Source of the DNA: Octopus bimaculoides
Taxonomy: Eukaryota
Direction: 5' to 3'
NCBI RefSeq assembly: GCF_001194135.2
Contig: NC_068985.1
Location: 71,583,825 to 71,634,486 of the forward strand
DNA: 50,662 nt
The notes below the pieces were generated by a model. That model was not told where the DNA came from and searched no databases. It saw only the letters and a program-made list of their open reading frames with translations. Below are positions 1 through 23,026 of the stretch, in pieces; position 1 is the stretch's first letter, and each line of letters opens with the position of its first letter. Both the position numbers and the translations under genes were made by a program.

Positions 1-376
1 GCCATGTTGGGATACCACCTTGAAGGGTTTTTAGTTGAACAAATCAACACCAAGACTTATATTTTAAGCCTAGTACTTATTCTATTGATCTCTTTTGCCA
101 AACCACTAAGTTATGGGAACATAAGCACACCAACACCAGTTGTCAAGGAGTGATGGTGGGGACAGACACAATGGCACACACGCTCACACACACACACACA
201 CACACACATACATATATACAACGGGCTTCTTTCAGTTTCCATCCAATACATCACAAGGTTTTGGTCAGCCTGAGACTATAGCAGAAGATACTTATCCAAG
301 ATGCCACACGGTGGGACTGAACCTGGAAACATGTGGTTGGGAAGCAAGCGTCTTACCAGACAGCCATGCCTGCACC
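1..376 (-). mobile_element. tRNA-derived composite SINE (family A), 3' end cut by the window edge
   Basis: Reverse complement of the 13892-14299 element: tRNA-like head near 300-376, internal (CA)n/(TA)n, 3' module at 1-165. Confidence 0.85.
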
Positions 377-1682
377 TATTTCTGTTCTTGAATTTTGTAC
401 ACCACTTTGCTAAAACCTGGCACTTTTCAGTAATAGTATATTATGCTTATATTCATGGATAGCTGTAACACTTTTGTTGTAGTAACCCTGTGAGTGACAA
501 CAAGCCAATTTACATTCAGTCCACATGCACAAGTATATAAATCATACTCCATGTTGATACAGTTTAAACATGTTTCATTTTTTGGCGTTTTCTTAGGGGT
601 TTCTTTATTTTTGCTTCTGCCAGAACCCTCACAAATTTTTCTGACAACAAAAACTCTCTCACAGATTTACATGCTATTCAGCTTATTCAATAATTGTAGC
701 TTAAAACCAGTCTCATAATCGATCTTTTGCCTTTCGTGCTGTTCATGTTATAGCTATTTTGTTGACTTTTTTTCCTATCAGAAATGCAATTATATGACTA
801 ATACAAATGTATATATATATATATATGTATGTATGTATGTATGTACATGTGTGTGTGTGTTTTGTCAGAAATGCAGAAAATATATTTGATATTTATATAT
901 CTTTTTATATATATATATATATACATATATNNNNNNNNNNNNNNNNNNNNNNNNNNNNNNNNNNNNNNNNNNNNNNNNNNNNNNNNNNNNNNNNNNNNNN
1001 NNNNNNNNNNNNNNNNNNNNNNNNNNNNNNNNNNNNNNNNNNNNNNNNNNNNNNNNNNNNNNNNNNNNNNNNNNNNNNNNNNNNNNNNNNNNNNNNNNNN
1101 NNNNNNNNNNNNNNNNNNNNNNNNNNNNNNNNNNNNNNNNNNNNNNNNNNNNNNNNNNNNNNNNNNNNNNNNNNNNNNNNNNNNNNNNNNNNNNNNNNNN
1201 NNNNNNNNNNNNNNNNNNNNNNNNNNNNNNNNNNNNNNNNNNNNNNNNNNNNNNNNNNNNNNNNNNNNNNNNNNNNNNNNNNNNNNNNNNNNNNNNNNNN
1301 NNNNNNNNNNNNNNNNNNNNNNNNNNNNNNNNNNTATATATGTTTCAGTGAGTTAATCTCATATCCTCAATACTTCAATACAAATATTTAGTTGTAGTAT
1401 GACTGTTCTATACCTTTAATCATGCAATATACACATAAACAAGACTGTATCATAACTATCTAGATCTTTCACATTCTCTTATTTCATAATCTATATTTTT
1501 TATTCTTTCTATTTTTTTCTTTTCTGTCTTTTGAATGTTTTTTTTATTTTTTTTATCTTTTGATCTCTATTCCATTCTCTGCTCAAACTGACCACCTTAC
1601 CTAGCCAACCTTCCCTCTATCTTTCTATATGTTTGATTGACAGTATGTACAATGATTTGATATTACTACTTTTGTGCATGTT

Positions 1683-1769
<87 letters not shown>

Positions 1770-2424
1770 GTGTTTGCATCTCCTTGTCTTAACATCATGT
1801 GATAGTGTCACTATCACGGAAGCAGTGTTCTTCATTTCCAGTCTACTATGGAAACATGTATAGCCATAGAGGAAATATTAGTTTTCTAGAAAACAGGTGG
1901 GAGAGTGGAACAAGAAATGCATCCTGTGATAGAAAATTTGCCTCAACAAATTCCATCTGACCAACGCAAGCATAGCAAAATGAACTTTAAAATGATGATA
2001 ATGATGATATATGTATATCATAATGATGGTATACATATATTAGCTATATATACATATATATGTGAATAGTAATATAAACTGAATGTGTGTGTGTGTGTGG
2101 ATCTGGTTTATAGTACTATATGTGTATATAGCTATATATATATTGTCCTTTTAGTTTCCTTTATCATGCTTGCATAGACCAGAGAGAATTTGTTGAAGCA
2201 AATTTTCTGTGGCTGTCACCAATTCTCACTTGTTTTAACTATTCTCCATTGTTGGACATATATATGTATACAATATTTACAAATACACACACACACATAT
2301 ATATATATATATACATACATATTTACGTATATACATTGATAATATGTGTGTGTGTATATCATGTATGTGTATATACATGCATACACACATATATACATCT
2401 ATATGTCTATCTCTCCTTTTCTCT

Positions 2425-2465
<41 letters not shown>

Positions 2466-2838
2466 CACGCCTACACAAATATGCATGTGCACATACAAAC
2501 GTATAGTCCACTTTAAAGAAAGACCTTCTCTGTATCCCAGTATGGCTAGAAAAGAGCCTTACATATATCGTAATATACAAACCAATTTTAAACAATTGTA
2601 TTACATGTGTGTGTGTGTGTGTTTATTCTCTATATAAATACACACATGCATATATATATATANNNNNNNNNNNNNNNNNNNNNNNNNNNNNNNNNNNNNN
2701 NNNNNNNNNNNNNNNNNNNNNNNNNNNNNNNNNNNNNNNNNNNNNNNNNNNNNNNNNNNNNNNNNNNNNNNNNNNNNNNNNNNNNNATATATATATGTAT
2801 GTATGTATGTATTTGTGTCTATATATATATATCAACAG

Positions 2839-2878
2839 CACTAATGTGTTTTCTTTCTTTTTTCTTTTGTAGGTAAGT
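2839..2878 (+). promoter_or_regulatory. Candidate recursive splice site (ratchet point): 3' splice site directly followed by a 5' splice site
   Basis: CACTAAT branch point (2839-2845), 20 uninterrupted pyrimidines (2849-2868), no AG between branch point and acceptor, AG at 2871-2872, GTAAGT at 2873-2878. Confidence 0.6.
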
Positions 2879-3564
2879 GTCTTCACATCCTTTATGTCCA
2901 GCATCTCCATCATCATCATTATCTATAACATAATCTCTTTCAACCAAAGGTGCCAAATTTGCACTAAGAATCCAGTAAATATTACACATTTTTTCTGTCA
3001 TTTTCTGCTTTTCTCAATTCCCTTTGACTTTGTAATAATTTAATTATTATTTATTTTTGTTTTGCTTTGATTTTCAATTAACTATACTTTTTTTCCACCC
3101 AGAACAAACACTCATTTCCATATGAAGCAAAGGAAAAGAAAAGCATCCTTTTAACCCCATGGTATTTCAGTTATAAATAACCCGTTTGATACTATTATAT
3201 CTCCTCTATGAAATGAATAGATAAATAAATATAAATAAATACTACGACTAAAAGAAAGATTTTTTAAAAAATACTGAAATAAAGAGGAAGCTACTTTCAT
3301 CTTGTTAAGAAAGGATTTATTCAGTGCAAACCAAAACTATTGAATTTTTAGGTGGATAGCTAAATAGGCAAATGGATTGAAAATAGAGACAAACAGACAC
3401 AAACTAAAAGAATGGGTGCTTCCCCTTTTTTCCTATAGAAAGAAAAGTCTCTTTCATTTATGTTCTGAATTTAATTTTCCTCCTTCTGCAATGAATAAAA
3501 TAAAGTAGAAGTAGCATGCATGGACCTACACACAAATACACATTCATATTTTAATAATAATGGC

Positions 3565-3755
3565 TTTCAATTCGGGCACAAGGCCAGCAATTTTATGAGG
3601 TGCTCGTTTAGTTATTTTATATCAACCACAGCACTAAGCTGTTACTTAACTTCATCAACCCTGAAAGGATGAAATGCAAAGTTGACTTCAGCAGGAATTG
3701 AACTGAAACCATAAAGCTTCAGAACAAATACCATTTGGCCTTTTGTCTGACTCTC

Positions 3756-3814
<59 letters not shown>

Positions 3815-4027
3815 CCTTTCTACTATTGGTACAAGACCTGAAATTTTGCGGGAGGAGCCAGTCGATTAGATCGACCCTGGTATGCAACTAGTACTTAATT
3901 TATTGACCCCAAAAGTATGAAAGGCAAAGTTGACTTCGGCGGAATTTAAACTCGGAATATAAAGGCAGACGAAATACCGCTAAGCATTTCGCCTGGCATG
4001 CTAATGATTCTGCCAGCTCGTCACCTT
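3565..4027 (-). mobile_element. Two tandem family C SINEs (about 3565-3760 and 3815-4027) in (TAA)n
   Basis: Both carry the reverse motif GAAAG..TGAAA.GCAAAGTTGACTTC.GC.GAATT. The 3815-4027 copy has (TAA)n on both sides. Confidence 0.85.
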
Positions 4028-4649
4028 AATAATAATAATAATAATGTTTTCTTTATTAACTCCTAATGGTCTACAAAAAACCATGGGGAACAGTACAAGG
4101 CAATACAATGAGGGTTTAATCTTAGTGGAATTAGAACTCAGAATGTAAAGAGCAAGAAGAAATTAATAATACTTTTATCGATAATCAGGTTTTCTTTGAT
4201 AATATCAATAATCATAAGTTTATTTTGGCATAGCTGATTTTTGTGATTTAAATTTTATATGGTGAAATCATAGAAAACAATTTTCCATTTTATTTATTTC
4301 CTGGGGGAAAAAAAATACTGGCATGATTCCTTTCTGGTTTTCTCCTCTCTTCAAATTCTCAGATTCTTCTTTTAAAAACAGACCACAAACATATATTCCT
4401 TCATTCACACTTTCATTCATACAAACATGATGAGATAATAATTGCTTCTTTGTGTCAGATGTTTGCAATCTCATAAAGAAATATTTGTACATTATTGCGT
4501 AGAGTGACATAAAACTTAAACGACATGTAAGTGATTTCTTTAGTGTCCATAGTGAAATAACTAGTGACAAGTAAAAGCAAAATGACTGATAACTATTTCA
4601 GCAATAACTTTTATATGAGTGCGTGTGTGTCTGTGTGTGTGTGTGTGTG

Positions 4650-4836
4650 TTGTATATATGTTCTCTTACTCTTTCTAATTTTAGAGTAAATTTTGAACAA
4701 CTGTCTACTTTGTAGCAAGGTTGTGTGTGTGTGTGTGTGTGTTGTATATATGTTTTCTTACTCTTTTTATGTTCTCTTACTCTTTTTAATCTTACAGTAA
4801 ATTTTGAGCAATTGTCTACTTGGTAGCAAGGTTGTG
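4650..4836. repeat. Local tandem duplication of an about 75 bp unit separated by (TG)n
   Basis: TTGTATATATGTT..CTTACTCTTT...GTAAATTTTGA.CAA.TGTCTACTT.GTAGCAAGGTTGTG at 4650-4725 and 4742-4836. The second copy has an extra internal duplication of about 19 bp. Confidence 0.85.
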
Positions 4837-5166
4837 AAGGAAAGTATCTTCTTTTAACCATCATCCTTTAAATCTTAAGAAGGTCTTGCAGATTTTTATG
4901 GTCCCAGGTATCATGATCATTTGTAGCATATCAGTTAAGGATTTGCATTCTCTCCTCAAGATGCATGCATGAATGTTTGTGTGTATCTGTATACATGTGT
5001 GTTTTCCCACCATCTATTGTTACATAGGTCATCTTATATAGTGAGAAGGTTGGTGTTAGATGTGGCAGCAACAAAATGGCTGGAAAGACAATCAAGATCT
5101 GCCAGGAAAGTACTGAAAGACCCCATGTAGGAAACGTATTATACATATATCAAACATCACCACCAT

Positions 5167-5394
5167 TTAAATGCTTTAGCATTCAGATTAATCTGTCAAA
5201 TTTAATGCTTATTTATTCCTGTTGTTTCAAATTAATCCTGCAATATCTCATAACTCAGAGATTTCAATGATATGATTGTTTATTTCAGAATAACATTGTA
5301 GGATAGGTATGAGAGGACAGATCTGGCCTGTTTGAACAGGAAACAGGTTGAATAATTAGACCTGATATGGCTGGTTTAAAAACTAAAGGTTTAA
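5167..5394 (+). mobile_element. piggyBac-type MITE (family P1), degraded
   Basis: Homologous to 41685-41905 (CTTTAGCATTCAGATTA.TCTGTCAAAT ... GATATGG.TGGTTTAAA..CTAAAGG), with TTAA at both ends. Confidence 0.65.
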
Positions 5395-5404
5395 TGTCAG
5401 TTGT

Positions 5405-5680
5405 GACATGTCTACACAGATGAATGGGCTTTCTCCAATGCTGTGCATCTCTATTCATCATGATTCTTTGTCAAGTTCAGCTTCTTGAGACTAGTCTTCA
5501 CTACTATGACTCATCTTCCACAGTTTCCATTTTCTTTGAGCACTCAGCATCTGTAAATAGCTGACATTCTCCATGTATATTACATATCCATACTAGTGTG
5601 GTCCTCCTTATTGCAAACTATGTCTGATTCCTGAGTTTTTATTTCAACTCCATCATTATACTCTATCATTCATATGCGTC
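5405..5680 (-). mobile_element. Decayed LINE ORF2 3' fragment (RTE-like)
   Basis: Minus strand gives broken remnants such as ENGNCGR and KKLNLTK that resemble the C-terminus of RTE-type LINE ORF2; stops and frameshifts throughout. Confidence 0.4.
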
Positions 5681-7415
5681 AAGTGAGGAAATTTCATTTT
5701 ATTCTTTTCAAGCCTTCAGAAATCTTATATATATATATATATATACATANNNNNNNNNNNNNNNNNNNNNNNNNNNNNNNNNNNNNNNNNNNNNNNNNNN
5801 NNNNNNNNNNNNNNNNNNNNNNNNNNNNNNNNNNNNNNNNNNNNNNNNNNNNNNNNNNNNNNNNNNNNNNNNNNNNNNNNNNNNNNNNNNNNNNNNNNNN
5901 NNNNNNNNNNNNNNNNNNNNNNNNNNNNNNNNNNNNNNNNNNNNNNNNNNNNNNNNNNNNNNNNNNNNNNNNNNNNNNNNNNNNNNNNNNNNNNNNNNNN
6001 NNNNNNNNNNNNNNNNNNNNNNNNNNNNNNNNNNNNNNNNNNNNNNNNNNNNNNNNNNNNNNNNNNNNNNNNNNNNNNNNNNNNNNNNNNNNNNNNNNNN
6101 NNNNNNNNNNNNNNNNNNNNNNNNNNNNNNNNNNNNNNNNNNNNNNNNNNNNNNNNNNNNNNNNNNNNNNNNNNNNNNNNNNNNNNNNNNNNNNNNNNNN
6201 NNNNNNNNNNNNNNNNNNNNNNNNNNNNNNNNNNNNNNNNNNNNNNNNNNNNNNNNNNNNNNNNNNNNNNNNNNNNNNNNNNNNNNNNNNNNNNNNNNNN
6301 NNNNNNNNNNNNNNNNNNNNNNNNNNNNNNNNNNNNNNNNNNNNNNNNNNNNNNNNNNNNNNNNNNNNNNNNNNNNNNNNNNNNNNNNNNNNNNNNNNNN
6401 NNNNNNNNNNNNNNNNNNNNNNNNNNNNNNNNNNNNNNNNNNNNNNNNNNNNNNNNNNNNNNNNNNNNNNNNNNNNNNNNNNNNNNNNNNNNNNNNNNNN
6501 NNNNNNNNNNNNNNNNNNNNNNNNNNNNNNNNNNNNNNNNNNNNNNNNNNNNNNNNNNNNNNNNNNNNNNNNNNNNNNNNNNNNNNNNNNNNNNNNNNNN
6601 NNNNNNNNNNNNNNNNNNNNNNNNNNNNNNNNNNNNNNNNNNNNNNNNNNNNNNNNNNNNNNNNNNNNNNNNNNNNNNNNNNNNNNNNNNNCACTTGTAT
6701 AGTAGATGTATATAGGATGAATGAAGCAAAGGAGACATAAATTCTGCAAGCTTCTTCATCAAAGGAAATCTGTCTAGTTGAATAGTTATTCTGAATAAAA
6801 ACACTGATACAGGGATGATAGTACCTTTTAGTCTACTGCAGACATCCTCTCTCATGCCACTGGCATGATAAGATGCACCCAATTCACACTGTAAAGTGTT
6901 GGTGGTGGAGAAGGCATTCAGCCATAAAAGACCATGCCAAAAATATACAACATATACGACAAAGATAAGATTGACCAGTCTCTTATTGTGTACATTTGAT
7001 GGTGAAGGACGGCGACAAATGACGAGACCCCGAGACACATCCAACTAAAAACTAGCATAGGAAAACGAGTCACTCTTCATAAAAATTAAGCCTTCACCAC
7101 TTGTTGATTTAATTCAATACATACATACATACATATATTATACGTGTATATGCAGACACACACACACACACACACAATGCACACACTGTTGGCTCATGTA
7201 TCTGTGTATAACAAATGCATGAGAATGAGCAAAATTGATGTGTTCATATTCAATAGTTAAGCGCAGCCAATTTGTGGCAGTATTCCAGCATGATTAGAAC
7301 CACAATGTTTGTTTCCTCTTTTTCTGTTTTTTTTTGGGGGGGGGGGGGGNNNNNNNNNNNNNNNNNNNNNNNNNNNNNNNNNNNNNNNNNNNNNNNNNNN
7401 NNNNNNNNNNNNNNN

Positions 7416-7457
<42 letters not shown>

Positions 7458-9247
7458 TACATACATGTGTGTGCAGGTGTGTATGTATTTGTAAAGAATA
7501 TATACACATCATATCACTTGGTTACGCATGGTGCGTGTCTTGGCTGCTAAAAATCTGCAAATATTTTTCATCTCTTGATTTGAAAAACGATACCATTTCT
7601 TCTGAGAGCTGAGATTATCTTCACCTAAAGCTTAAAATTCCTAAACTGAAGGTAGGTTGATCAGGTAACGAAGGATTAGGCACATACACACACCAGCACA
7701 ACCATCTCTCTCTCTCTCTCTCTTCATTCGTGTCCTTCTTTATCTTCCATCACCAATCTCTAATGCACTCCAGTCTTTCTCATCTCTCTCTCTCTCTATT
7801 TCTCTCTCCTAACCTGATAGGGGGATTACAATGGAAGTTTTATTTGTAGCAATTCCAGTACTATTAAACCGAAGAACTTGGCAGTAGCCTCAAGTAGATG
7901 GAAATGGTGTTGTAGAGGTACAGGTTGATGTTGTCAGCTAGTAGCCAAGCATCGACTTTATATAATGCCAGCAGATTAAGTGGCTAGATGCCATCTTATA
8001 ACTGCCACTAAACTGAATTTTACTAAATTTGGCATACAGCCAAGAATTGGCATGAATTTTTCTATTATTATTAGGCATAATAAGTTTATTCATCTGTATG
8101 TTTCTTTTTTCTGAAATGCATTTGCATTCACAAATAATCATATCTTCCTTGCATTCTTTATTTTCATTGTTTTTTTTTTTTATTTTTGTCATTGTTTGCT
8201 TTTATTTTTCTGACTTTTTTCTTTTAATTTGATTCTTTGCTCCAACTCTTCCCTCTCTTATCTCCTCCTCCTCCTCTAACTCTCCCATAATGATTAATAC
8301 ATGAGTTTTAAGGTCTTTCGGTGTTGCTTATATCAATGTCTGGAATGAGATAACAGTGTTTATTAATCTAATAATTTAAGCCCTAACTCTGTATATCACT
8401 GGCATGTTACCCTCTCCAACCATTTTTCTTTAAATAAGTCTGTAGGAAGATAGAAGAACAGCAAATATAATATCTGCAGGACTATCTCGACTGCTGTATC
8501 AATATCATTGATGCTCTGCTTGAAATTCTACATGTTGTTTTTGTTGTTGTAGTCATTGTATAGTCCCTGATCAACACTGAATGAACAGATGTATAATCAA
8601 TCGCATTCCATTCATGACCAGCCTGTGCCTTTATAACTCAGAGATTACATGTCCTTCTTTTCTTTGACATTGTAGGATGTCATTTCAAGGAGATCTGGTC
8701 ATCATTTCTAGCATGCTGAGTGACCACATGAAGGCTCTTTTATTGTGATATATTCAATATTTTGTTATTAATGATGTTTGTAATGATGTTATTGTTATTT
8801 ATCCTAAGATCAAAACTACCTGAGCAAACCAGTTGAGCGACCATGCAATGAAACCCTTGTTGGTTAATAACATGGACCATTGTTGAAAGAGATAAAAGTG
8901 TCTCCCTACATGCTTAATCTACATTTGAAGTCTCCAAACTGTTTAGAGTTCCTACAAGTTCAAACTGCTAGAAATACCAACCAAAATATCCCATCAAACC
9001 AGGCCTTACCATCTAAAAAAATTTGAAGATATGCTATTTGAAAATTTGATAGGATAATCATTGCTGCAATGTTTTGTGCAGAGCTGACCTGGGGCTAAAC
9101 TTTAATTACAACATTTGAGGTCTTAAGTGAAGCAGGGTTATGTGTATCACACATAACACCCTAGCAAAAGATAACATGCTGCTTGAAACAATGAATTTAC
9201 TAGAGTTCTAAAACCATATTGCATGTCAAGAAATAAAGTTTAGACTA

Positions 9248-9452
9248 TGAGTGGGTGCTAAAAAGATCCTGGCTTTAAACGCATTGTAAAAGGCCTAGTT
9301 GGAGGCCCAAGTTCTTTTCCAGGGCTTAGAAAAACTGAAGGATCGCTGCAATAAGTGTGTAAATCTGAGAAGAGAGTATGTTGAATAAAATCATAACTGA
9401 TCCTCCAGTATTTTCTTTTACCCAAACCCAGTAACTTTTCAGTACCCCCTCA
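9248..9452 (+). mobile_element. Mariner internal-deletion derivative (MITE), 205 bp
   Basis: TA at 9246-9247 and 9453-9454. Ends including TA match at 24 of 30 positions (TATGAGTGGGTGCTAAAAAGATCCTGGCTT vs TATGAGGGGGTACTGAAAAGTTACTGGGTT). Interior encodes GLEKLKDRCNKCVNLRREYVE*, a mariner transposase C-terminus. Confidence 0.85.
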
Positions 9453-9611
9453 TATATTGTACTCTATATTTTTTATCCCCCAACTTGTTTTAAGACATTC
9501 ACATGATGAAAATGAAGTTAAGTTGGCAGAGAAATTCTTCTGGTCATGCTCTTGAAAAACAAAGGCACAATTTCCCAAACTTCTAGTTTCTTGTATTTAT
9601 TCTTCATTCGT

Positions 9612-9765
9612 TTAACCCTTAAGCTTTTAAACTGGCAATATCCAGCCCAAATATCCTACCTGTTTTATATTCAAACCAGCCAGATCTGACTTCTCACACA
9701 TAACCTACAATGTTGTTCTAAAATGAAACAATCGCATCATTGAAATCTCAAAGTTATGAGATAAT
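9612..9765 (-). mobile_element. piggyBac-type MITE (family P1), partial, ending at a SINE
   Basis: Starts TTAACCCTTAAGCTTTTAAACTGGCAATATCCAGCCCAAATATCCTACCTGTTTTATATTCAAAC, the reverse complement of the P1 right end. Confidence 0.55.
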
Positions 9766-9770
9766 ACATA

Positions 9771-10167
9771 CTCTTTGACTCTTTTACTTGTTGCAGTCAT
9801 TTGACTGCGGCCATGCTGGAGCACCGCCTTTAGTCGAGAAAATCGACCCCAGGACTTATTCTTTGTAAGCCTGGTACTTATTCTATTGGTCTCTTTTTGC
9901 TGAACCGCTAAGTTACGGGGACATAAACACACCAGTATCAGTTGTCAAGTGATGGTGGGGGCAACAAATACAGGCACACAAACACACATACATATACATA
10001 TATACACCGGGCTTCTTTCGGTTTCCGTCTACCAAATCCACTCACAAGGCTTTGGTTGGCCCAAGGCTATAGTAGAAGACACTTGCCCAAGGTGCCACGC
10101 AGTGGGACTGAACCCGGAACCATGTGGTTGGTAAGAAAGCTACTTACCACACAGCCACTCCTGTGCC
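9771..10167 (-). mobile_element. Full-length composite SINE (family A)
   Basis: Reverse complement of 13892-14299 with head, internal CA/TA microsatellite, 3' module and (GTAAAAGA)-type tail. Confidence 0.9.
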
Positions 10168-10284
10168 TATATGGTTAATTAAAAACAAGACTCCTGGCAG
10201 TTTGCTGTGCTTGAAAAGACAGGTCAAGCTAAGCAAAAGCATGGCTGTCCTTGCATACAGGCTTGTCCCCTGCAACCTTCCCCA

Positions 10285-10525
10285 GTTGAGCATCCCTAAT
10301 CTTGTGGGCTCATAGTTGCTGGTGTCACATAAACGCACCCATGCCAGTGCTGTGTAAAAGCACCCAGTACACTTTGTAAAGTGGTTGGTGTTAGGAAGGG
10401 CATCCAGCCATAGAACTATGCCAAAACTACATGGATCCTGGACGACTCTTCAGCTGACCAGCTCCTGTCAAAGCCTCCAGCCCATGCCAGCATGGAAAAC
10501 AGACGTTAAATGACAACGATGATGT
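10285..10525 (+). mobile_element. SINE family D ((GAT)n-tailed)
   Basis: GTGGTTGGTGTTAGGAAGGGCATCCAGCC...CCCATGCCAGCATGGAAAACAGACGTTAAATGAC..GATGAT. Confidence 0.8.
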
Positions 10526-10948
10526 TAATAAATAGGCATTACATTTAATAGAATAATCTGAATGCAAAAGAGTTAATGTCTATAAATCTATGCCAGAATG
10601 GATTTGAATCAGGAGTTATTTAAAGGAGTATTTTATGGCTGGATGCACTTCTTGTTGCCAACCCTTACCTGTTTTCAAAAGGGATTTCTTTTTTATTGCA
10701 GAGGTCTTTGTTGATGCAATGCGACAAGTCATAATGACAGTAAAGAATGTCAACATGACAATTGCTTCTTCACTTGGCTAGTGTCAAGCATGAAACATCA
10801 ACATTCATGCATATTCCTGCATGCACACACACAAACACACACGCACACACACACGCACACACACACACACACACACGCACACACGCACACACACACATGT
10901 ATACAACAAGATTCTTGCAGTTTCTGACTACAAAACTACACAAATACA

Positions 10949-10985
<37 letters not shown>

Positions 10986-13159
10986 TTCTATGTGTATACA
11001 TCCACACACATGCACAAAGGCACCCCTTAGGAGTGCTCTGATGATAAAACATATTTCCATATATCTAATTACTTATGATCTATCTAGGCTGTGAATATCA
11101 GAACTTCTTTTAAATGATACAGGTTTAAACAGGACAATTTTAATTAGCATGTCACAATTATTGTTAGTGCTAATAATGCCACATTAAAAAGGAATGTGAC
11201 TAAATTTAAGAACATTTTGAGGAAAAAATTTATTATTTGGTATATGTTCTGATGTAAAAGGCTGGAGCTGGGTGCAGTTCTCTGATTTACCAATTCTGGT
11301 CAAACCATCTAATCTATGCCAGTATGGAAAACAAACACTAAATGTTGATGACGATGATGATGATGATGATGATGATGGTGATGACCACGACAACGATGAT
11401 CTATCTAAGTAAGAGAAGCTATTAATAACTATCTGATTATATCATCCTAAGTCCTCTTGTATTGAATACTACTGAATATTGTATAACTGATTTAGCTGAA
11501 ATGACTTTTTAAGTCATTACCGCTTAAATTGGATACCCAGTAAATGCTATTCATTATGCTCTAAACATTTTCAATGAAATTCTTGGTTATTCTAACTATC
11601 CTTGATCAAAGCTACTGAAAAACTATTGAAAGACTAGATTGATACATTCATAGCTTGTTGGTGAATAACATGAAAATGAACAGTTATTTTGAATGATGCT
11701 CAACAGAAGTAACAGATTAGTCTCATTGCCATCAAACATTGTCTGAAATATTTTAAGTTCATTGGACTTGTTACATGCAAACAGAAAAATAAAAAAACTC
11801 ATTTCACTGAGAAACTTATATGCTTACAATCAGTTTACTTATGACAGCCAAAATTTAGTTGAAAATTAATTTTTCTGGTTCTGACGGCATCATATTGAAG
11901 ACTTTCAGTTAGAGCACTTAGAGCGCTTGTGTCTGACATTTAATCAAAACAATGGCAATATCACAGTTTTGTCTGTATATCCAGAGAACAAGTCAGTCTC
12001 CCATCCTATGCATAAAATCTCAGATATCATGTATGATACAGCCAATGTTCAGTTATTTGCACTGAACAAGGAATTTTCAGCATACTATCAAAATGTAGAA
12101 GTAGCCGTAGTAGTAGTGGCAGCAGTGATGATGGTAGTAGTGGTAGTGGTGACGGCGGCGGTGGTGATGGTAGTAGTAGTAGATGTAGTTGTATGCATCC
12201 ATGTGTATCTATATGAATCCATACGCATTTATATGCATGCAACAAATCTATATATTGGCCACATGATGTCTATGGTGGTAGCGGTGGCGACAGCCGTGGT
12301 TGTTGTTGTTGTTGTTAAGGTAATTATAATGATGATAATGCAGCACGCATCAAGATATCATATGATGTTCACATTATTGGAGCAAGACCAGTTCTCCCAC
12401 CCCCAACATGAAAAGAAGAGCTAGACTGACAGATGAGATGAGCACCTATGTTAGCAGCCTCTTTTCTCTATGAAAGAAGATGCTTTGCAATTTATTTGAT
12501 AGTACCAGTCTCTAGTCTCAATTATATAATAAAACTTGCAACAATTCAGAAATTAAACGCCACAGCCCACCCATTAAGAAGCACACTTTGCCATTTTTAT
12601 ATTTGTTTAGCTTATAATGTTCTTTTTTTTTATTTCCCCACTCTCTCACTGCTCTCCCTCTCTCTCCCTCCTTACTCCCTCTCTCCTTTTTTGTTTACTT
12701 GAAAGTAATTATTTTCTTTCTTTATTTATTTATTGTTTCAGTTATTTTAGTTTTGTTGATGTAATTATTATGTAGGCCAGAGAACACAGCTGGGAGAGGC
12801 CACTTGCCCTTAGCAGCAAGTGTAATTTGAGATGTCTAGTATTCCCTGATAAACCTCAGGTGGCTGTCCCCTTACTGGGATGTTTCATTTCATTTCCTTC
12901 CTTCTATTATAATGTTGTATTCCAGCTGTTTTCTTATATGTGATTCTTTGTAAACACTTGGGTTTTTTTTTTTTGCTTTTTTTTTTTTNNNNNNNNNNNN
13001 NNNNNNNNNGTAATTTGTCCTTGCTACTAATGCTGTTATAGACATCTTTACTGTACAATGAATCTTAGACGCCATTAATAATAATAATAATGATGATGAA
13101 GATGATGATGATGATGAAGATGATGATGATGATGAAGATGATGATGATGATGATAACCA

Positions 13160-13555
13160 TTATTTCAAATTCTGGCACCAGGCCAACAATTTGGATGGAG
13201 GGGATAAGCTGAGCCAATTACATCAACCTCAGTGCTTAACTGGTACTTATTTTATTGACCCCGAAAGGATGAAAGGCAAAGTTGACCTTAGCAAAATTTG
13301 AACTCAGAACATAAAGACAGACAAAATTACCTGGCCTGCTGATGATTTTGCCGGCTCACTGCCTCATAACAACAATAATAATAATCCTTTCACCTGAAGG
13401 TACAAGGCCTCAAATTTGTGGGGTGGGGATTTGTCAATTATATCGACCCCAGTGTTTCACTGATACTTAATTTATCAACCCCCAAAATGATGAAAGGCAA
13501 AGTCAACCTCAGCGGAATTTGAACTCAGAATGTTGTGACAGGAGAAATAACAATG

Positions 13556-13620
<65 letters not shown>

Positions 13621-13760
13621 AATGATGGCTACAGATTTTGGCACAAGGCCAGTAATTTTAGGAAAGGGGATAAGTTGATTACATCAACTCCAGTGCTTAA
13701 TTAGTACTTATTTTATTGACCCCCAAAAAGATGGAAGGACAAAGTCAACCTCAGTGGAAT
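13160..13760 (-). mobile_element. Cluster of three family C SINEs separated by (GAT)n/(TAA)n
   Basis: Copies at about 13160-13367, 13385-13530 and 13632-13760, each with the GGTACTTATTTTATTGACCCC...AAGG core or a close variant. Confidence 0.8.
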
Positions 13761-13891
13761 TTCTCTATCCAAGATCCCAAGTTCAGTTATACTTTGCTGC
13801 AGATGGGTTGGTATGTATCGTGTTGCTCCGATAATGATAAGTATGAAACTGAAAGTGTATGTTGGGTACTGAATTTGCAAAATCCTTATCA

Positions 13892-14299
13892 GGCGCAGGA
13901 GTGGTTGTGTGGTAAGTAGCTTGCTCACCAACCACATGGTTCCGGGTTCAGTCCCACTGCATGGCACCTTGGGTAAGTGTTTTCTACTATAGCCTCGGGT
14001 CGACCAAAACCTTGTGAGTGGATTTGGTAGACGGAAACTGAAAGAAGCCCGTCGTATATATGTATATATATATATGTATGTGTGTGTATGTGTTTGTGTG
14101 TGTTTGCCCTACCACCATCGTTTGACAACCGATGCTGGTTTGTTTACATCCCCGTAACTTATCGGTTCGGCAGAAAGAGACCGATAGAATAAGTACTAGG
14201 CTTACAAAGAATAAGTCCTGGGGTCGATTTGCTCGACTAAAGGCGGTGCTCCAGCATGGCTGCAGTCAAATGACTGAAACAAGTAAAAGAGTAAAAGAG
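13892..14299 (+). mobile_element. Full-length composite SINE (family A), best copy in the window
   Basis: tRNA-like head with A-box-like TGGTTGTGTGG and B-box-like GGTTCAGTCCC, then CCTTGGGTAAGT (resembles the start of the CORE domain), internal (TA)n(TG)n, 3' module and GTAAAAGAGTAAAAGAG tail. Confidence 0.9.
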
Positions 14300-14951
14300 A
14301 ATGGTCCATAGATGTTTGCTTTGTCTTGTATTTTTCTAACTACATTTGTGTCCAGAGAGCAGCTGATATCCACAACAGAACATATTTTTTTATTTGTGGT
14401 CCCACACAACGGTTTAAGTGTTTTAAGTAGGTGGCTGTTTTAATTTTTAAGTTCCATCAATATTCTTTTGACCCATCAGCCTCAATATAGTCAACTTTGT
14501 AGGTATTTTCTTTTTATGTATGACATGGTGTCTAGGCAGCTCCCTGGTTGGCCAGCTTCTGTCAAACCATCCAAGCTATGCCAGTACAGAAAACAGATAT
14601 TAAACAATGGTGTTGTCTGTCTGTATGTAGGTATGTGTGTATGTAGATGCGTAGGTATGTACACACATTATTACACACTATCTTTATTGATCTATACTCC
14701 CTTTCATTTTGACCAGCTTCATTCACCATTTGATAATTATAAGCCTTAATTAAACTATAAACCTTAATTAAAAACTATAAACCTTAATTATATGTTTTGT
14801 TTAACTTACCCACACACTTTAAGCTGCCTCTGATAAAACTTTGAAATCACTGTCAATAAAATGTTATGAATACTAGAATCTATATGTGCATTGAGTCCTT
14901 CAATTAAGGTTTATAGCTTTTATGTATTTAAAAACAGTTATCTTTCTCTCT

Positions 14952-14990
<39 letters not shown>

Positions 14991-15107
14991 NNNNNNNNNN
15001 NNNNNNNNNNNNNNNNNNNNNNNNNNNNNNNNNNNNNNNNNNNNNNNNNNNNNNNNNNNNNNNNNNNNNNNNNNNNNNNNNNNNNNNNNNNNNNNNNNNN
15101 NNNNNNN

Positions 15108-15175
<68 letters not shown>

Positions 15176-15184
15176 CATTCTCAG

Positions 15185-15360
15185 TGAAGATTTGTATTTC
15201 CCTAGAACTTCTCTTGTTGAAACTGCAGACTACAAAGTTCTTCATGTTTCATCCTGCATCCTATTCGTACATGTAAAATAAAATCTTGCACTGCCATATT
15301 TCTGTAAAAATGGTAATCTCATCTGAACAACTCAGCATGTGTGTGTGTGATGGTGAGGGA
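15185..15360. repeat. Unclassified old dispersed repeat, copy 1 (copy 2 at 34417-34590)
   Basis: GAAG.(C/T)TTGTATTTC.CTAGAA.TT.TCTTGTTGAAA.TG.AGACTACAAA...CTTCATGTTTCAT.CTGCATCCTAT.CGTACATGTAA is shared by both copies in the same orientation. Confidence 0.75.
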
Positions 15361-15904
15361 GAGACTTCAAAAGAAGTTCTTTTGCAAAAGACCATCAGCT
15401 GAATATATTAAAAGCTTTATTTTTTTTTCTAACAGTTTTTCTAATCTAGCATTATGTGGGATGGTTTGTAACAAATCTGGATTCCTGCAAATTTGCATAA
15501 TTTTGAAGCAATTGTTTTCGCAGCTGGATGGGTGATCTTCCTACCAGTAATCAGTCAACTGTAAATAATGGAGAGAACCTGTTATTCAATCAGCCTGACT
15601 GTTGCAAACATAATTATGAGATTTGGCCAGGAGTACAACATATCTGTACTCGGATTGGATTTCAAAACCATGTGGTCAGCCATCCAATACTTTAACTTAA
15701 TAATTACTGGTTTATTTTGACTACTGAGGAGTCTGGTTTTTAACAGTTGACAATTCTAACTAATGGTTAAGCAGATTTAGAGTTTAGGAATTTTATTACG
15801 GTGCATTCGTGTATATATGTTGTGTAGGTGTTTGTATGTGTATTTATGAAAAAATGGTTTATTCGCAGTCATGAAGTTGGGGTTTAATCCAACTCTACAG
15901 CACC

Positions 15905-16125
15905 TTACATAAGATAGATACAGAAAAGTTACCTTCTCGAATCATGCTGACTCATAAGGGCCAATTTTCCAGCTTCCATGGCTTATAAATTCCCCACCTG
16001 AATGGACTGGAACAAAGTAAAATGAAGTGTTTTGATCAATAATACAACACATCGCCCACTCCAGGAATTGAAACCACAACCTTACGATCATAAGTTCAAC
16101 ACCCTAACCACTAAGTCATGCACCT
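15905..16125 (-). mobile_element. tRNA-derived SINE family E
   Basis: Minus strand head GGTGCATGACTTAGTGGTTAGGGTGTTGAAC...GGTTTCAATTCC has A- and B-box-like motifs and is homologous to 41330-41490. Confidence 0.7.
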
Positions 16126-16585
16126 CTATGCACCTTACATAAGTGTAATATACAATAGTCTTGAATTGACCCAAGCATTGTGAGACGAAACTAAGTAAAT
16201 TCAATTGTGTGCAAGCTTGTTATATTTCTGTTGATCCTAAAACTAGAATGTCTGTCAGGAAAACTAGAAGAGGACCCATTTATTTCACTTATGGAGAATT
16301 GAATGACTCCCATAATGTTAGATGGTGTCACTTTGCAGGTAATGAAGACATCAATGACTTGGTAGTCTCAAACATCCTCCCGCAACAAATACCTCTATTT
16401 CTTTACTCTCTTACTGTTTTCAGTCATTGAACTGGGGCCATCTTGAGGAACTATTCCTAAAGCTTTTAATCAATTATATTGATTTCATAAATTTGTTTGC
16501 TTCTTATTTTATCGATTTCTAGATATTAAGAGAGTTTCTATCCTTTACAGATGTATATAATACCTATTTACACTAGTTGACACAA

Positions 16586-16631
<46 letters not shown>

Positions 16632-17139
16632 TTACATGCATACACATATACACACAGTCACTTGCATTCATCCATACAGACACATGCACGTTTGTGTATG
16701 TGTGCGCATACATGTTCTACATGGTTTCTGTCAACAAAATTTATTTTACAATCCAAGACATTGATTGAACAGACTTCCCAAAGAAGCCATAACTAAGTGA
16801 TTGCAAAGTGAACTTTCTTGCCTGTTCCCATAGCCACTCCCACACATACTTTGTATGACCTAGAAAAAAAAAAAACATTTTCATAGGTTCTCTGAGAATC
16901 AATGATATTTGATGTCAGTTTGTGGGATCTTACATATAAAATGTGACAGGAATGAGAGACCTGCAATGTAGTTGTATACAACTTGCACTGGGATTAAAAA
17001 CTGAATATTATAAACAAAAACAATGTTTGTAATATTGAAGGCGATTTGTTATATATGCTTAGAGCATATTCAAACTTGTAGAAAGCCATTCACTGCATTT
17101 TGTCATGGAGAAAATTTCTTGCTATAAAAAATGGGGTAA

Positions 17140-17560
17140 CTAACTGGCACTTCGTCAGATACAACAATGAAGGTTGATCCAGTCAATGGAACAGGTTGCT
17201 CATGAAACTAACATGCATGTGGCTGAGCACTCGACAGACAAACCTTTAACCCTTTCGTTACTGTATTTATTTTGAGATACTCTGTGTTTCTTTCAATTAC
17301 TTTAAATATAACAAATAATTTTGTAAAATAACTTAGATATCATTCAGCTAGTGTTAGAAACATAAATTATGATTAAGGTTTGGTGGAAGATTTTAATTCA
17401 AAACTTATGAAAACAAGACATTTTTACTCAGAGCTAGAACCAGTTTCAGCCGGGTTGGTAGCGAAAGGGTTAATGCAGATCTCGAGGAGATTCAACATAA
17501 CACAGAATGCAACAAGGCTGGGAATTGAGCCAAATACACTAACCACCAAAACACGAGCCT
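17140..17560 (-). mobile_element. SINE family E interrupted by a piggyBac-type MITE
   Basis: The flanks join to match the uninterrupted copy at 41200-41330, which has a single TTAA at the equivalent position. Confidence 0.75.
17250..17469. mobile_element. piggyBac-type MITE (family P2), 220 bp
   Basis: TTAA TSD at 17246-17249 and 17470-17473; termini CCCTTTCGTTAC / GTAGCGAAAGGG (11 of 12 match). Confidence 0.85.
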
Positions 17561-19461
17561 TCATTTGAAAAATGGTGTAAATACACCTAAAACCAGCTCA
17601 CAGTGCCACCCACCCAGATTGTGAGATGCAAGCATTCCAGAATAGTTATCTCAGTGTCTGTGACTGAGAGGAGATAACCAATCCAAAATGCATGCATCTC
17701 ACAGTCTGAGCAGGTGGCCCTTCAAGCTGATTTTTTGTGCATTTACACCATTTGTCTACAGCAAGAAATTTTCTCCTTAACAAGACATAGTGAATGGCTT
17801 ATTTACGAGTTCAAACATGCCCCAAGCATATTTGAACTGATAATAACCTTGTACTTATACTCTTCACTGCTTTGCACTGCCATTCTGTGATTTGTTATTG
17901 TTGTAAGCATTTACTTACAAGTCAGATTCGATCCAGCAGAACTATGTTCAAATGTGTTCCAACCATGACTATTGCATTGTAATTGGAGGGAGATTTGGTC
18001 TTGTTACTTTGTAGCAGGCTGAATGGCCACCATGAGTAGCCACCACGTCGAAGTTTCTTTCATTGATTCAATGAAACCGATGATGGAAATGATGGTGAAG
18101 TGCTTGCTGATGAAGATGATGAGTGATGAATATATTTTCCTGCAGTTTTTTTCTTTTACATGTGTGTAGGTGTAGGGGTGGAGTGAGATGGGTGTTTCTA
18201 GAATAAGCCATTATTTCGACTGAGTAAATGCAACAGAAGAGTAAGCATACATATCACTTCTCATTTAAGAAGTTGTCATTTTTGGGCAAGATGTTCAGCA
18301 GAAAATCACATGCTCCAACAATCCAAAATTAAATTTCAGCAATCAAATATTGAAATCTTCAATGGAAGAACAAACATTCAGCCAATGAAATCCACAGATT
18401 TAAATCAAAATAAATATATAAATAAAAAACTGAAAAAAGAAAGAAAAGAAAGCAGAAATAAAGGCAAGCCCCTCCCCTGAAAAAAATCAAAAATGTTAAA
18501 GAAATAATAATAAACAATCCCAAGATACAAAAAGCAAAATGAAAAATAAAAATGTAATTAAGATTTATAACCCATCATTGTCATGCCCACCACCACCATC
18601 AATGCTTACATCATTAATATCACCACCACTCACACCACCAATACCATCACCACCCCCACTCAATACCATCATTACCTCTAGTAATACCATTATCTCGATT
18701 TATCCCACCACGAACAACAGCGACAACAGTACCAACAATACCCCATCATCAGCACAAACATCATATCCACCACCATTCCCAACACCACAACAACTACCAC
18801 TACTATGACCACCACACCTCAAACAACAGCAGCAACAACATTGTTGCGAACCATGATTCGTGGCAGACAACATCTGTTTGACATTTCAGAATCCTATAGG
18901 CAATTCATTCAATTTCTGTTAGAATTTTAGTTGCAAATCATGTGGAGAAATTTCATGGTTTGAGCTTGTTACATTGTGCATTAGACATGGATACAGGATG
19001 CTCTCATTTTGATACAAGTTTAACGTATTGCCTGAAAGAACGACAACAACAACAACAACAATGACGATGATGATGACAATGATGATGATGATGAAGCTGC
19101 TACTGCTGCTGCTGCTGTTGATGATGTTGAGCCCAAGATCAACTTTGAGAAGATTCATGATCAAAAATGACCCAGTCATGACTGTCCAGCTTTTCCCAGA
19201 TATCTAGGGCTATATTATTATCTGTGTCCTTTCTTTCTTTAAATGAACAATTGGGTGTTATGATTTGAGAAAGATTTTTGGTTACTTCTTTCTGGTAGAT
19301 CAAGAGACTACAGAGAGGCTTCACTCAGTGATTAAAATTTGGAGGATGTTCAGGATAGCGTCTAAATAACTACTGCAGTATAGTTTGTTCTAACAGTACA
19401 TCTATATTCAAGTGGGGATAAATATTACCTTTCAGTATTAATACTTCCTTTGTCCCTAATA

Positions 19462-19754
19462 CTCTTTTACTTGTTTCAGTCATTTGACTGTGGCCATGCT
19501 GGAGCACCACCTTTAGTCGAGTAAATCGACCCCAGGACTTATTCTTTGGATGCTTAGTACTTATTCTATCAGTTTCTTTTGCCGAACCGCTAGGTTACGA
19601 GGACGTAAACACGCCACCATCGGTTGTCAAGCGATGTTGGGGGGACAAACACAGACACACATACACACACACACACACANNNNNNNNNNNNNNNNNNNNN
19701 NNNNNNNNNNNNNNNNNNNNNNNNNNNNNNNNNCCACACAGCCACTCCTGCGCC
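19462..19754 (-). mobile_element. Composite SINE family A (part lies in the 19680-19733 gap)
   Basis: 3' module and extreme 5' head are visible on either side of the gap; short TAATA duplication at both flanks. Confidence 0.85.
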
Positions 19755-22164: not shown

Positions 22165-22318
22165 ATCTGCAGGCTCAATTGGTACTTATTATATCAATCT
22201 CTGAAAGGATGAAAGGCAAAGTCAACCTCAATGGTATTTGAACTCAAAACATAAGGAACCAGAAGAATGATGCTAAACATTTTGTCCGGTTTTGTCCGGT
22301 GTGTTAATGATTCTACCT
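22165..22318 (-). mobile_element. Family C SINE, older copy
   Basis: GGTACTTATTATATCAATCTCTGAAAGGATGAAAGGCAAAGTCAACCTCAATGGTATTTGAACTC core. Confidence 0.75.
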
Positions 22319-22371
22319 GTAATGCCTTCTATATTTCAACATCTTGCCTCTCACAATATAGAAACATTTCT

Positions 22372-22585
22372 AAGGTGGTGAGCTGGCAGAAACATTAGCA
22401 TGTCAGACGAAATGCTTAACGGTATTTCATCTGTCTTTATGTTCTGAGTTCAAATTCCACCAAAGTTGACTTCACCTTGCATCCTTTCGGGGTCGATAAA
22501 TTAAGTACCAGTTGCGTACTGGGGTTGATCCAATCAACTGGCCCCTTCCCCAAAAATTTCAGGCCTTGTGCCTAGAGTAGAAAAG
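22372..22585 (+). mobile_element. Full-length family C SINE with 17 bp TSD
   Basis: AATATAGAAACATTTCT at 22355-22371 and 22586-22602; head AAGGTGGTGAGCTGGCAG, B-box-like GAGTTCAAATTCC. Confidence 0.92.
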
Positions 22586-23026
22586 AATATAGAAACATTT
22601 CTCATAGCTGCAGCAGACAAAATGGAAAAGGCATTTCTCTGGAAGATGGTGATGGAGATGCAAGTTATTCTGGAATCCAGTTTGCAAAAGCTGATGAGTC
22701 AAAAACTACAAAAGGTTATCTTGTAATAGTTCTGTTAAGGAATCAGGTTCTATTTATACAACTGACCTTGATATAATGTTTGCTTATGGTGATATCAACT
22801 TTACTGTTTTATGCAAGATAAATTTTGTTGCTGATGTCAAGTAACTCTATACTTTGCCTGTCCTTCATTCAGCATCTCTCAGGTCAGCTCCATCTTTACC
22901 AAAGATTTTTTGCTTCTTGTCTGGATTTTGTGTCTGCCTGAACTAGACTTCCCACCCAAGTTTACTCTATATCACAATCTTAATTGATCTTGTGCTTATG
23001 TAGCTTAAAAAACTTAACCACTAACC

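What the first reader, a model, noticed from the sequence alone, without database searches (positions are those of the whole stretch)
2839..2878. Near-ideal recursive splicing (ratchet) site, possibly in a cephalopod giant intron
Seen: CACTAAT branch point with the A 28 nt upstream of the acceptor, 20 uninterrupted pyrimidines, no intervening AG, then TAG|GTAAGT, a consensus acceptor fused to a consensus donor (zero-length exon). It is in non-repeat sequence and is the only site of this quality I found on either strand. Established: Drosophila ratchet points and vertebrate recursive sites in very long, often neuronal, introns have this layout. Inference: the window lies in a long + strand intron removed stepwise. 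I am not aware of recursive splicing being described in cephalopods but cannot check the literature here.
Basis: partly seen in the sequence, partly recalled or inferred. Interest (0 to 1): 0.8.

Follow-up and report, generated by a model that had tools for sequence, protein, structure and literature searches.

The report
Candidate recursive splice site, octopus DNA
A textbook-quality splice acceptor fused to a splice donor sits in non-coding, non-repeat octopus DNA and is much rarer than chance in this window, but nothing available here can show that it is transcribed, spliced or conserved.

Summary
The motif is exactly as described: CACTAAT (A2844), 20 pyrimidines (2849-2868), TAG|GTAAGT at 2872/2873. 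It is the only AGGTAAGT on either strand. On an approximate combined acceptor+donor matrix it scores 0.95; the next best site scores 0.84. Three null models give about 0.001-0.005 such sites per window, which means tens to a few hundred per octopus-sized genome by chance.

It meets the sequence-level marks of fly ratchet points, including TT at -5/-6. The only downstream donors that could define a cryptic exon are weak.

The window is octopus DNA: its SINE-like repeats are 90-92% identical to an Octopus bimaculoides chromosome. No reading frame at the site matches any protein, nor do 74 others tested. The + strand around the site is T- and C-rich with many more pyrimidine runs, which is the invertebrate sense-strand intron signature.

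Transcription, junction reads, host gene and conservation could not be tested.

- Real recursive site in a + strand long intron: about 0.45.
- Chance motif: about 0.35.
- Edge of an ordinary unannotated exon: about 0.12.

No paper in the library links recursive splicing to cephalopods. If real, this is a new member of a known kind; interest is moderate.

The parts
2839..2845 (+). Candidate branch-point motif CACTAAT (contains CTAAT). The putative branch A is at 2844, 28 nt before the acceptor.
   Evidence: Read from the sequence. It lies inside the AG-free zone 2839-2870. CTAAT plus CTAAC occur 87 times on the + strand, so one falling in the -18..-40 window has a chance of about 0.04.
2849..2868 (+). 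Polypyrimidine tract of 20 uninterrupted C/T (17 T, 3 C), with T at -5 and -6 (2868, 2867).
   Evidence: Only 0.34% of strand-positions in the window have >=19/20 pyrimidines. TT at -5/-6 is present in 196 of 197 fly ratchet points.
2870..2872 (+). Acceptor TAG. The splice junction would lie after G2872.
2873..2878 (+). Consensus donor GTAAGT directly abutting the acceptor (zero-length exon layout).
   Evidence: It is the only AGGTAAGT in the window on either strand. Donor log-odds are 10.6 bits of a possible 13.2 on an approximate matrix.
2873..2974 (+). Possible cryptic recursive exon. It would be 77 nt if the donor AAG|GTGCCA (G2950) is used, or 102 nt if CCA|GTAAAT (G2975) is used. The frame starting at 2873 is open for 57 codons.
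   Evidence: Both donors are weak (4.3 and 3.4 bits), at a level that occurs every few hundred bases by chance. The frame has no protein or Pfam match.

Best explanation
The site is a functional composite splice site on the + strand of an octopus pre-mRNA, that is, a recursive (ratchet-type) site inside a long intron.

Proposed mechanism (inferred, not shown):
1. U2AF and U2 snRNP recognise the 20-nt pyrimidine tract, TAG2872 and the CTAAT branch point at A2844.
2. An upstream exon is spliced to 2873.
3. That places GTAAGT directly after the exon and regenerates a near-perfect U1 site.
4. This donor is then used to remove the next intron segment, so no sequence from the site reaches the mRNA.

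If exon definition is needed, as in flies and vertebrates, the only candidates for the far side of a cryptic exon are weak donors 77 or 102 nt downstream. The much stronger regenerated donor would outcompete them.

What is shown: the motif, its rarity, its non-coding and non-repeat setting, and the octopod origin. What is inferred: sense-strand intronic location and use by the spliceosome.
For: - Motif: every element is present. It has the top composite score in the window by a wide margin, 0.951 against 0.842. TT at -5/-6 matches 196 of 197 fly ratchet points.
- Rarity: about 0.001-0.005 expected per window by three nulls.
- Published strand bias: such sites occur at about 0.07-0.12 per 100 kb on antisense strands of long introns in all 13 animals tested. 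They are 4-22 times more frequent on the sense strand in all five invertebrates tested, including sea urchin (PMC2773006). A high-scoring site in invertebrate DNA is therefore more often real than not, if it is in a long intron.
- No exon: neither site-spanning frame has a homologue. Nor does any of 74 other non-repeat ORFs, which include all >=40-aa ORFs that passed the repeat, low-complexity and entropy filters in 1-9600. A positive control retrieved Octopus proteins.
- Strand composition: in 1-15 kb the + strand has T>A by 5.6-8.8%, C>G, and 26 against 3 pyrimidine/purine runs >=12 nt. AATAAA occurs 54 times on + and 81 on -. This matches the T- and C-rich coding strand of invertebrate introns (PMC5786239).
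Against: - There are no RNA data, no annotation and no cross-species alignment. The three defining properties (sense intronic position, junction or sawtooth reads, conservation) are untested.
- A genome of about 2.7 Gb should hold tens to a few hundred equally good sites by chance.
- The pyrimidine-run excess on the + strand also raises the chance rate on that strand, so it is not independent support.
- The skews are heterogeneous. They reverse in 25-35 kb, and they are larger than fly intron averages, so they may reflect repeats or low complexity rather than transcription.
- No convincing downstream donor exists for a cryptic recursive exon.
- No second ratchet-grade site occurs on the + strand in the remaining 47 kb.
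- The octopus genome is SINE-rich like vertebrate genomes. In vertebrates, sense/antisense enrichment of such sites is only 0.9-1.5 fold, and recursive splicing is rare in mouse brain.
- The matrices used were typed from general metazoan consensus values, not trained on octopus.
Confidence: 0.45

Rival explanations
1. Chance motif with no function. A pyrimidine-rich, low-complexity patch of AT-rich non-coding DNA happens to be followed by TAGGTAAGT. The site is intergenic, antisense, or in a transcript but not meaningfully used.
For: - The expected rate of 0.001-0.005 per 50-kb window scales to roughly 50-250 such sites in a 2.7-Gb genome.
- The site sits in a stretch where + strand pyrimidine runs are very common: 26 runs >=12 nt in 15 kb. 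The CT-rich character continues downstream of the site to about 2935.
- It abuts a microsatellite and an assembly gap.
- No exon, RNA family or homologue anchors a gene here.
- The downstream donors are no better than chance.
- There are no further good sites on the + strand.
Against: - The composite is the clear outlier of 268 AG|GT sites in the window.
- It carries extra features not needed for a chance hit: CTAAT at -28 inside the AG-free zone, TT at -5/-6, and a pyrimidine at -3.
- In the invertebrates examined, most high-scoring sites in long introns lie on the sense strand.
- If the + strand is transcribed, a 3' splice site this strong would be hard for the spliceosome to ignore (inference).
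Confidence: 0.35
2. Edge of an ordinary but unannotated exon. One option is the acceptor of a cassette, poison, UTR or lncRNA exon that starts at 2873 and merely begins with GTAAGT (77 or 102 nt long, the latter frame-preserving and open). The other is the donor of an exon that ends at 2872 and starts in or before the gap at 2663-2786.
For: - The frame from 2873 is open for 57 codons, and the 102-nt version is a multiple of three.
- In mouse, 46 of 84 AGGT recursive candidates turned out to be unannotated exons (PMC8797253).
- Flies have a small set of expressed exons with ratchet features.
- The gap upstream hides sequence.
Against: - No protein or Pfam match exists for the frame.
- Its translation is isoleucine- and serine-rich and looks like random AT-rich sequence.
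- Both candidate exon-end donors are weak, and the GTAAGT at the exon start would outcompete them.
- An exon ending in a 20-nt pyrimidine tract preceded by a TA microsatellite is implausible as coding sequence.
- An open frame of this length is common in this window: 228 gap-free stop-to-stop frames of >=55 codons.
Confidence: 0.12
3. A minus-strand coding exon spans the site (ORF 2822-3013, which includes ...LAPLVERDYVIDNDDDGDAGHKGCEDTYLQKKKERK...). On this reading the + strand splice motif is a by-product of coding sequence on the other strand.
For: This ORF ranks fourth in the window on a crude 'protein-like composition' score, level with true transposase fragments. It is open for 64 codons.
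Against: - A word-indexed search of 5.8 billion proteins found only 1 candidate, and it did not score.
- An exhaustive phmmer search of 1.84 billion representatives gave three marginal hits, all to internally repetitive proteins through several weak stretches.
- There is no Pfam family, and the exact ORF is not on record.
- The 'protein-like' score comes from purine-rich codons (K, E, D, G), which simply mirror the + strand pyrimidine tract.
Confidence: 0.03

Closest known systems
Drosophila intronic ratchet points (zero-nucleotide recursive splice sites; Ubx, kuz, Bx; Burnette 2005, Duff 2015, Joseph 2018/2021, Pai 2018)
   Same: Juxtaposed strong acceptor and donor, (Y)n N Y AG|GTAAGT. The pyrimidine tract is very prominent, with TT at -5/-6. 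The 3' splice site signal is stronger than that of ordinary introns. The setting is non-coding.
   Different: - Fly sites are defined by junction, sawtooth and lariat reads and by sharp conservation; none of these is available here.
- Fly sites have a roughly 50-nt cryptic exon with a usable downstream donor. Here only weak donors lie at +77 and +102.
- Position -3 is T here, whereas C is the consensus.
- The host intron is unknown.
Vertebrate recursive splice sites with RS-exons (Sibley 2015; mouse brain set in PMC8797253)
   Same: The AGGTAAGT core complementary to U1, pyrimidine enrichment in the 20 nt upstream, and a high 3' splice site score distinguish real from non-recursive AGGT sites. 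This site has all three.
   Different: - Vertebrate sites lie in the first or second introns >50 kb of very long neuronal genes and are highly conserved. Neither property can be tested here.
- Vertebrate RS-exons have a real downstream donor.
- Vertebrate sites are rare (about 20 in mouse brain), so a motif alone predicts poorly there.
Computationally predicted RP-sites enriched on the sense strand of long introns in sea urchin, bee, beetle and mosquito (Shepard et al. 2009, PMC2773006)
   Same: The status is the same: a sequence-level prediction in a non-model invertebrate. That paper gives the best available prior, a 4-22 fold excess of sense over antisense sites.
   Different: Those predictions rest on genome-wide strand statistics. 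This is a single site with unknown strand relation to any gene, and no mollusc was included.
Zero-length exon / pseudo-exon in rat tropomyosin, and RS-like cryptic or poison exons
   Same: An acceptor is immediately followed by a donor, and the site may act as a decoy or be resplice-competent.
   Different: Those cases are tied to a characterised alternative-splicing decision in a known gene, not to stepwise removal of a long intron.

Membership tests
Fly-type intronic ratchet point (zero-nt recursive splice site) | Juxtaposed AG|GT with strong 3' and 5' splice-site consensus (normalised motif score >0.85 in Pai et al.) | tested here: met
   TAG|GTAAGT scores 0.951 on an approximate matrix. 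It is the only site >=0.85 among 268 AG|GT in the window. The matrix is not octopus-trained.
Fly-type intronic ratchet point (zero-nt recursive splice site) | Prominent pyrimidine tract with TT at -5/-6 (196 of 197 fly sites) | tested here: met
   T2867 and T2868; 20 uninterrupted pyrimidines at 2849-2868.
Fly-type intronic ratchet point (zero-nt recursive splice site) | Lies on the sense strand inside a long (>10-20 kb) intron | tested here: inconclusive
   No annotation is reachable. No coding exon was found in the window. The + strand of 1-15 kb shows the T>A, C>G and pyrimidine-run bias expected of an invertebrate sense-strand intron, but the bias is heterogeneous across the window.
Fly-type intronic ratchet point (zero-nt recursive splice site) | Cryptic RS-exon (about 50 nt) bounded by a downstream donor weaker than the ratchet donor | tested here: inconclusive
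   Donors at G2950 (4.3 bits) and G2975 (3.4 bits) are weaker than the ratchet donor (10.6 bits), as required. They are no better than chance-level GT sites.
Fly-type intronic ratchet point (zero-nt recursive splice site) | Junction reads from the upstream exon, sawtooth coverage, and lariats to and from the site | not testable with these tools
   No RNA-seq or eukaryotic read data are available.
Fly-type intronic ratchet point (zero-nt recursive splice site) | Sharp conservation of the acceptor|donor core in related species | not testable with these tools
   No cephalopod genome collection is available. Indirect attempts through called ORFs found nothing.
Vertebrate RS site with RS-exon | AGGTAAGT core, pyrimidine-rich 20 nt upstream, high 3' splice site score | tested here: met
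Vertebrate RS site with RS-exon | RS-exon with a competent downstream 5' splice site | tested here: inconclusive
   Only weak donors lie within 330 nt.
Vertebrate RS site with RS-exon | First or second intron >50 kb of a long, brain-expressed gene | not testable with these tools
   The host gene is unknown.
Ordinary protein-coding exon at or across the site (either strand) | Open frame with detectable protein homology or a domain | tested here: not met
   Frames are open on both strands, but there are no credible homologues or Pfam hits.
Interspersed repeat / transposon-borne splice motif | Other copies of the surrounding sequence | tested here: not met
   2833-3550 has no other copy in the window, and none was seen in 25 kb of O. 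bimaculoides chromosome. A genome-wide copy number was not testable.

The most novel reading that the evidence does not exclude
Octopus removes giant introns stepwise at conserved, fly-type ratchet points, and this is one of them. That would be the first recursive splice site in a mollusc or lophotrochozoan. Together with flies, the sea-urchin prediction and vertebrates, it would indicate that ratchet-type recursive splicing is ancestral to bilaterians and was kept in a large, SINE-rich, neurally complex invertebrate genome.
Probability: 0.3. Interest if true: 0.55.

Novelty: new member of a known kind. Interest (0 to 1): 0.35.

Why it matters
Recursive splicing is documented experimentally only in Drosophila and a few vertebrates. 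How general it is, and whether it is needed for long introns, remain open questions.

Cephalopods combine an invertebrate lineage with a vertebrate-sized, repeat-rich genome and long neuronal genes. They are therefore a useful test of whether ratchet points track phylogeny or intron architecture.

One candidate motif does not answer that. It does give a concrete, cheaply testable locus, and it motivates the genome-wide sense/antisense count that would settle the question at the class level.

Tried and rejected
- Exact look-up of the site-spanning minus ORF and two long window ORFs in public assemblies, hoping for contigs from other octopus runs or species. None was on record.
- Word-indexed protein search with both site-spanning ORFs. 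No hit.
- Search for host-gene exons with a 4,288-aa concatenation of 74 non-repeat ORFs. No hit at E<=1e-3. A positive control with transposase and SINE ORFs did return Octopus proteins, so the negative result is meaningful. Exons lying in ORFs shorter than 40 aa were not covered.
- Exhaustive phmmer search with the minus ORF. Only spurious hits to repetitive proteins.
- Rfam and tRNA scans, hoping for an oriented RNA gene. Nothing.
- Fetching an O. bimaculoides gene locus to calibrate octopus splice sites. Only the first exon aligned, so it was useless for that purpose, though it confirmed the shared repeats.
- Looking for further ratchet-grade sites on the + strand. None.
- The Sibley 2015 paper is not held in the library.
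- The minus-strand coding-exon idea was rejected. Its 'protein-like' composition mirrors the pyrimidine tract.

Full report
**Observation.**
- CACTAAT occupies 2839-2845, with its second-to-last A at 2844.
- 2849-2868 are 20 uninterrupted pyrimidines (17 T, 3 C).
- G2869 is followed by TAG (2870-2872) and then GTAAGT (2873-2878).
- A2844 is 28 nt before G2872.
- The nearest upstream AG is at 2837-2838. The AG-free zone 2839-2870 therefore contains the candidate branch point, as expected for a working 3' splice site.

**Is it more than chance?** AGGTAAGT occurs once in the window, counting both strands. On an approximate juxtaposed acceptor+donor matrix with a normalised score (matrix values typed from general metazoan consensus, not octopus-trained), the site scores 0.951. 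The next best of 268 AG|GT sites scores 0.842, and no other site reaches 0.85.

Three nulls agree on the chance rate:
- Markov simulations of order 1, 3 and 5 give 0.65-1.6 AGGTAAGT per window but <=0.003 with a strong pyrimidine tract.
- In the real sequence, 311 of 92,458 strand-positions have >=19/20 pyrimidines upstream. This implies about 0.001-0.003 perfect sites.
- In a decoy control, tracts followed by any of the 560 8-mers with the same base composition gave only one hit outside the site itself. This implies about 0.002-0.005 for a given 8-mer.

A CTAAY motif in the -18 to -40 window adds a further factor of about 0.04 (counts), but that feature was noticed after the fact. The motif is therefore a real outlier for one window.

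**Setting.** The window is a draft eukaryotic assembly with 13 N gaps, about 36% G+C, many microsatellites and interspersed repeats. Evidence that it is octopod:
- SINE-like repeats in the window are 90-92% identical over about 415 bp to copies on Octopus bimaculoides chromosome CM046609.1.
- Their translations share a 27-residue identical run with the annotated O. bimaculoides protein LOC106867260.
- One mariner remnant is 58% identical to an Octopus vulgaris Mos1-type transposase.

The site begins 53 nt after the gap at 2663-2786, which is flanked by a TA/TATG microsatellite. From 2833 to 3550 the sequence has no other copy in the window.

**Coding potential.** Both strands have open frames across the site: + from 2873 for 57 codons, and - at 2822-3013 for 64 codons. 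Neither looks like a gene.
- A word-indexed search of 5.8 billion proteins found nothing.
- An exhaustive phmmer search of 1.84 billion representatives with the minus ORF gave three marginal hits. All were to internally repetitive proteins through several weak stretches.
- Pfam finds nothing for either frame.
- The minus ORF's protein-like composition simply mirrors the pyrimidine tract, because purine-rich codons encode K, E, D and G.
- A concatenation of 74 further non-repeat ORFs matched no known protein. It held all >=40-aa ORFs in 1-9600 that passed the repeat, low-complexity and entropy filters, plus the most protein-like ones elsewhere. The same database returned Octopus proteins for the repeat ORFs.
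- Rfam and tRNA scans were empty.

The window therefore shows no detectable exon. That fits a deep intron, but it equally fits intergenic DNA.

**Which strand is transcribed?** Only indirect evidence is available.
- In unique sequence of 1-15 kb, the + strand has T>A by 5.6-8.8% per 5-kb bin (z = 2.6-3.9). C>G holds in all three bins but is negligible in 10-15 kb (z = -0.5).
- Pyrimidine runs >=12 nt outnumber purine runs 26 to 3 in 1-15 kb. The counts are 9:16 in 15-35 kb and 16:4 in 35-50.6 kb. Overall they are 51:23, p = 0.0015.
- T runs >=6 number 59, against 33 A runs.
- AATAAA occurs 54 times on + and 81 on -.
- In invertebrates the coding strand of introns is reported to be T- and C-rich (PMC5786239, citing Touchon 2004). 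The + strand around the site has that signature.

Three caveats apply. The skews are larger than the fly averages and reverse in 25-35 kb. They could come from repeats or low complexity. The same bias also makes a chance pyrimidine tract about five times more likely on the + strand (265 against 46 positions), so it is not independent support.

**Comparison with known recursive sites.** Fly ratchet points are juxtaposed acceptor|donor motifs with very strong pyrimidine tracts. 196 of 197 have TT at -5/-6, and this site has T2867 and T2868. Real sites typically score >0.85 on a normalised motif score. Mouse recursive sites differ from other AGGT sites in the AGGTAAGT core, upstream pyrimidines and 3' splice site score. 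This site meets all these sequence-level marks.

The weak point concerns the cryptic exon. Flies and vertebrates recognise the site through a short cryptic exon bounded by a downstream donor. Here the only candidates within 330 nt are AAG|GTGCCA (G2950, 77-nt exon, 4.3 bits) and CCA|GTAAAT (G2975, 102-nt exon, 3.4 bits). The ratchet donor scores 10.6 bits, and donors >=5 bits occur about every 300 nt by chance. No second ratchet-grade site occurs on the + strand in the other 47 kb.

**Weighing.** Shepard et al. 2009 counted such sites in introns >50 kb. The background on the antisense strand is 0.07-0.12 per 100 kb in nearly all 13 animals. The sense strand carries 4-22 times more in all five invertebrates (fly, mosquito, bee, beetle, sea urchin) but only 0.9-1.5 times more in eight vertebrates. 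Two scenarios follow.
- If octopus behaves like the other invertebrates, a site of this quality is more likely real than chance, even allowing that only a minority of the genome is long intron.
- If octopus behaves like vertebrates, which its SINE-rich large genome might suggest, a motif alone predicts poorly. Recursive splicing is rare in mouse brain, and many AGGT candidates there are unannotated exons.

Averaging over these scenarios, and allowing for error in my chance rate, I estimate:
- about 0.45 for a genuine recursive site in a + strand long intron;
- about 0.35 for a functionless chance motif;
- about 0.12 for the edge of an ordinary unannotated exon;
- about 0.03 for a minus-strand exon.

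**Novelty.** Searches of the held literature found no paper with 'recursive splic*' and octopus. The only paper with 'recursive splicing' and cephalopod is unrelated. A 2026 review lists only Drosophila, mouse and human as documented cases. If confirmed, the site would extend a known mechanism to a new phylum: a new member of a known kind, not a new kind.

**What would decide it.** The cheapest are to map the window onto the annotated genome and to count sense against antisense motifs genome-wide in long octopus introns.

Noticed in passing
window 47950-48860 (-) and 37028-37961 (-): Two decayed mariner/Mos1-type transposon remnants, both on the minus strand. The first aligns to about 300 of about 350 residues of full-length transposases (58-61% identity, one from Octopus vulgaris) but is broken into several frames. 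The second keeps HTH_48 and DDE fragments.
   Followed up: partly
window 13821-14299 (-), 9769-10174 (+), 23070-23525 (+), 32724-32936 (+), 30-390 (+), 19460-19677, 29411-29606, 47680-47917 and others: A SINE-like repeat family with at least eight copies in the window, 90-92% identical to copies on O. bimaculoides chromosome CM046609.1. Part of it is translated inside the annotated protein LOC106867260 (a 27-residue identical run), which suggests an exonised repeat or a doubtful gene model.
   Followed up: partly
window 1-15000 and 35001-50662 versus 15001-35000: Strong regional strand asymmetry. Pyrimidine runs >=12 nt outnumber purine runs 26:3 and 16:4 on the + strand in the outer parts, but 9:16 in the middle. 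T>A skew follows the same pattern. This could mark transcription units, repeat orientation or replication-related skew.
   Followed up: partly
window 44685-45061 and 11927-12424: Imperfect trinucleotide arrays, (GTA)n then (TGG)n with an 18-21-nt higher-order unit. They give a G-rich skew (+0.39 over 44-46 kb) and long spurious ORFs of poly-V, poly-H, poly-T and poly-P in several frames.
   Followed up: partly
all 13 N gaps, e.g. 931-1334, 2663-2786, 5750-6691, 46065-46485, 47143-47663: Most assembly gaps are flanked on both sides by TA, TG/CA or CT microsatellites. The gaps therefore probably hide expanded simple repeats rather than unique sequence. This matters for the gap 53 nt upstream of the finding.
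   Followed up: no
window 17377-17600 and 41410-41590: Two short stretches translate to similar peptides (..RLGIEPNTLTTKTRAF.. and ..GNHELNTLTTKPCTF..) with raised G+C. They are reminiscent of a tRNA-derived SINE head, but ARAGORN and Rfam call nothing there.
   Followed up: no
window 16860 (-): Second-best acceptor|donor composite in the window: aatgttttttttttttctag|GTCATA, score 0.842. It has a good acceptor but a poor donor, so it is probably only an acceptor-like tract.
   Followed up: no
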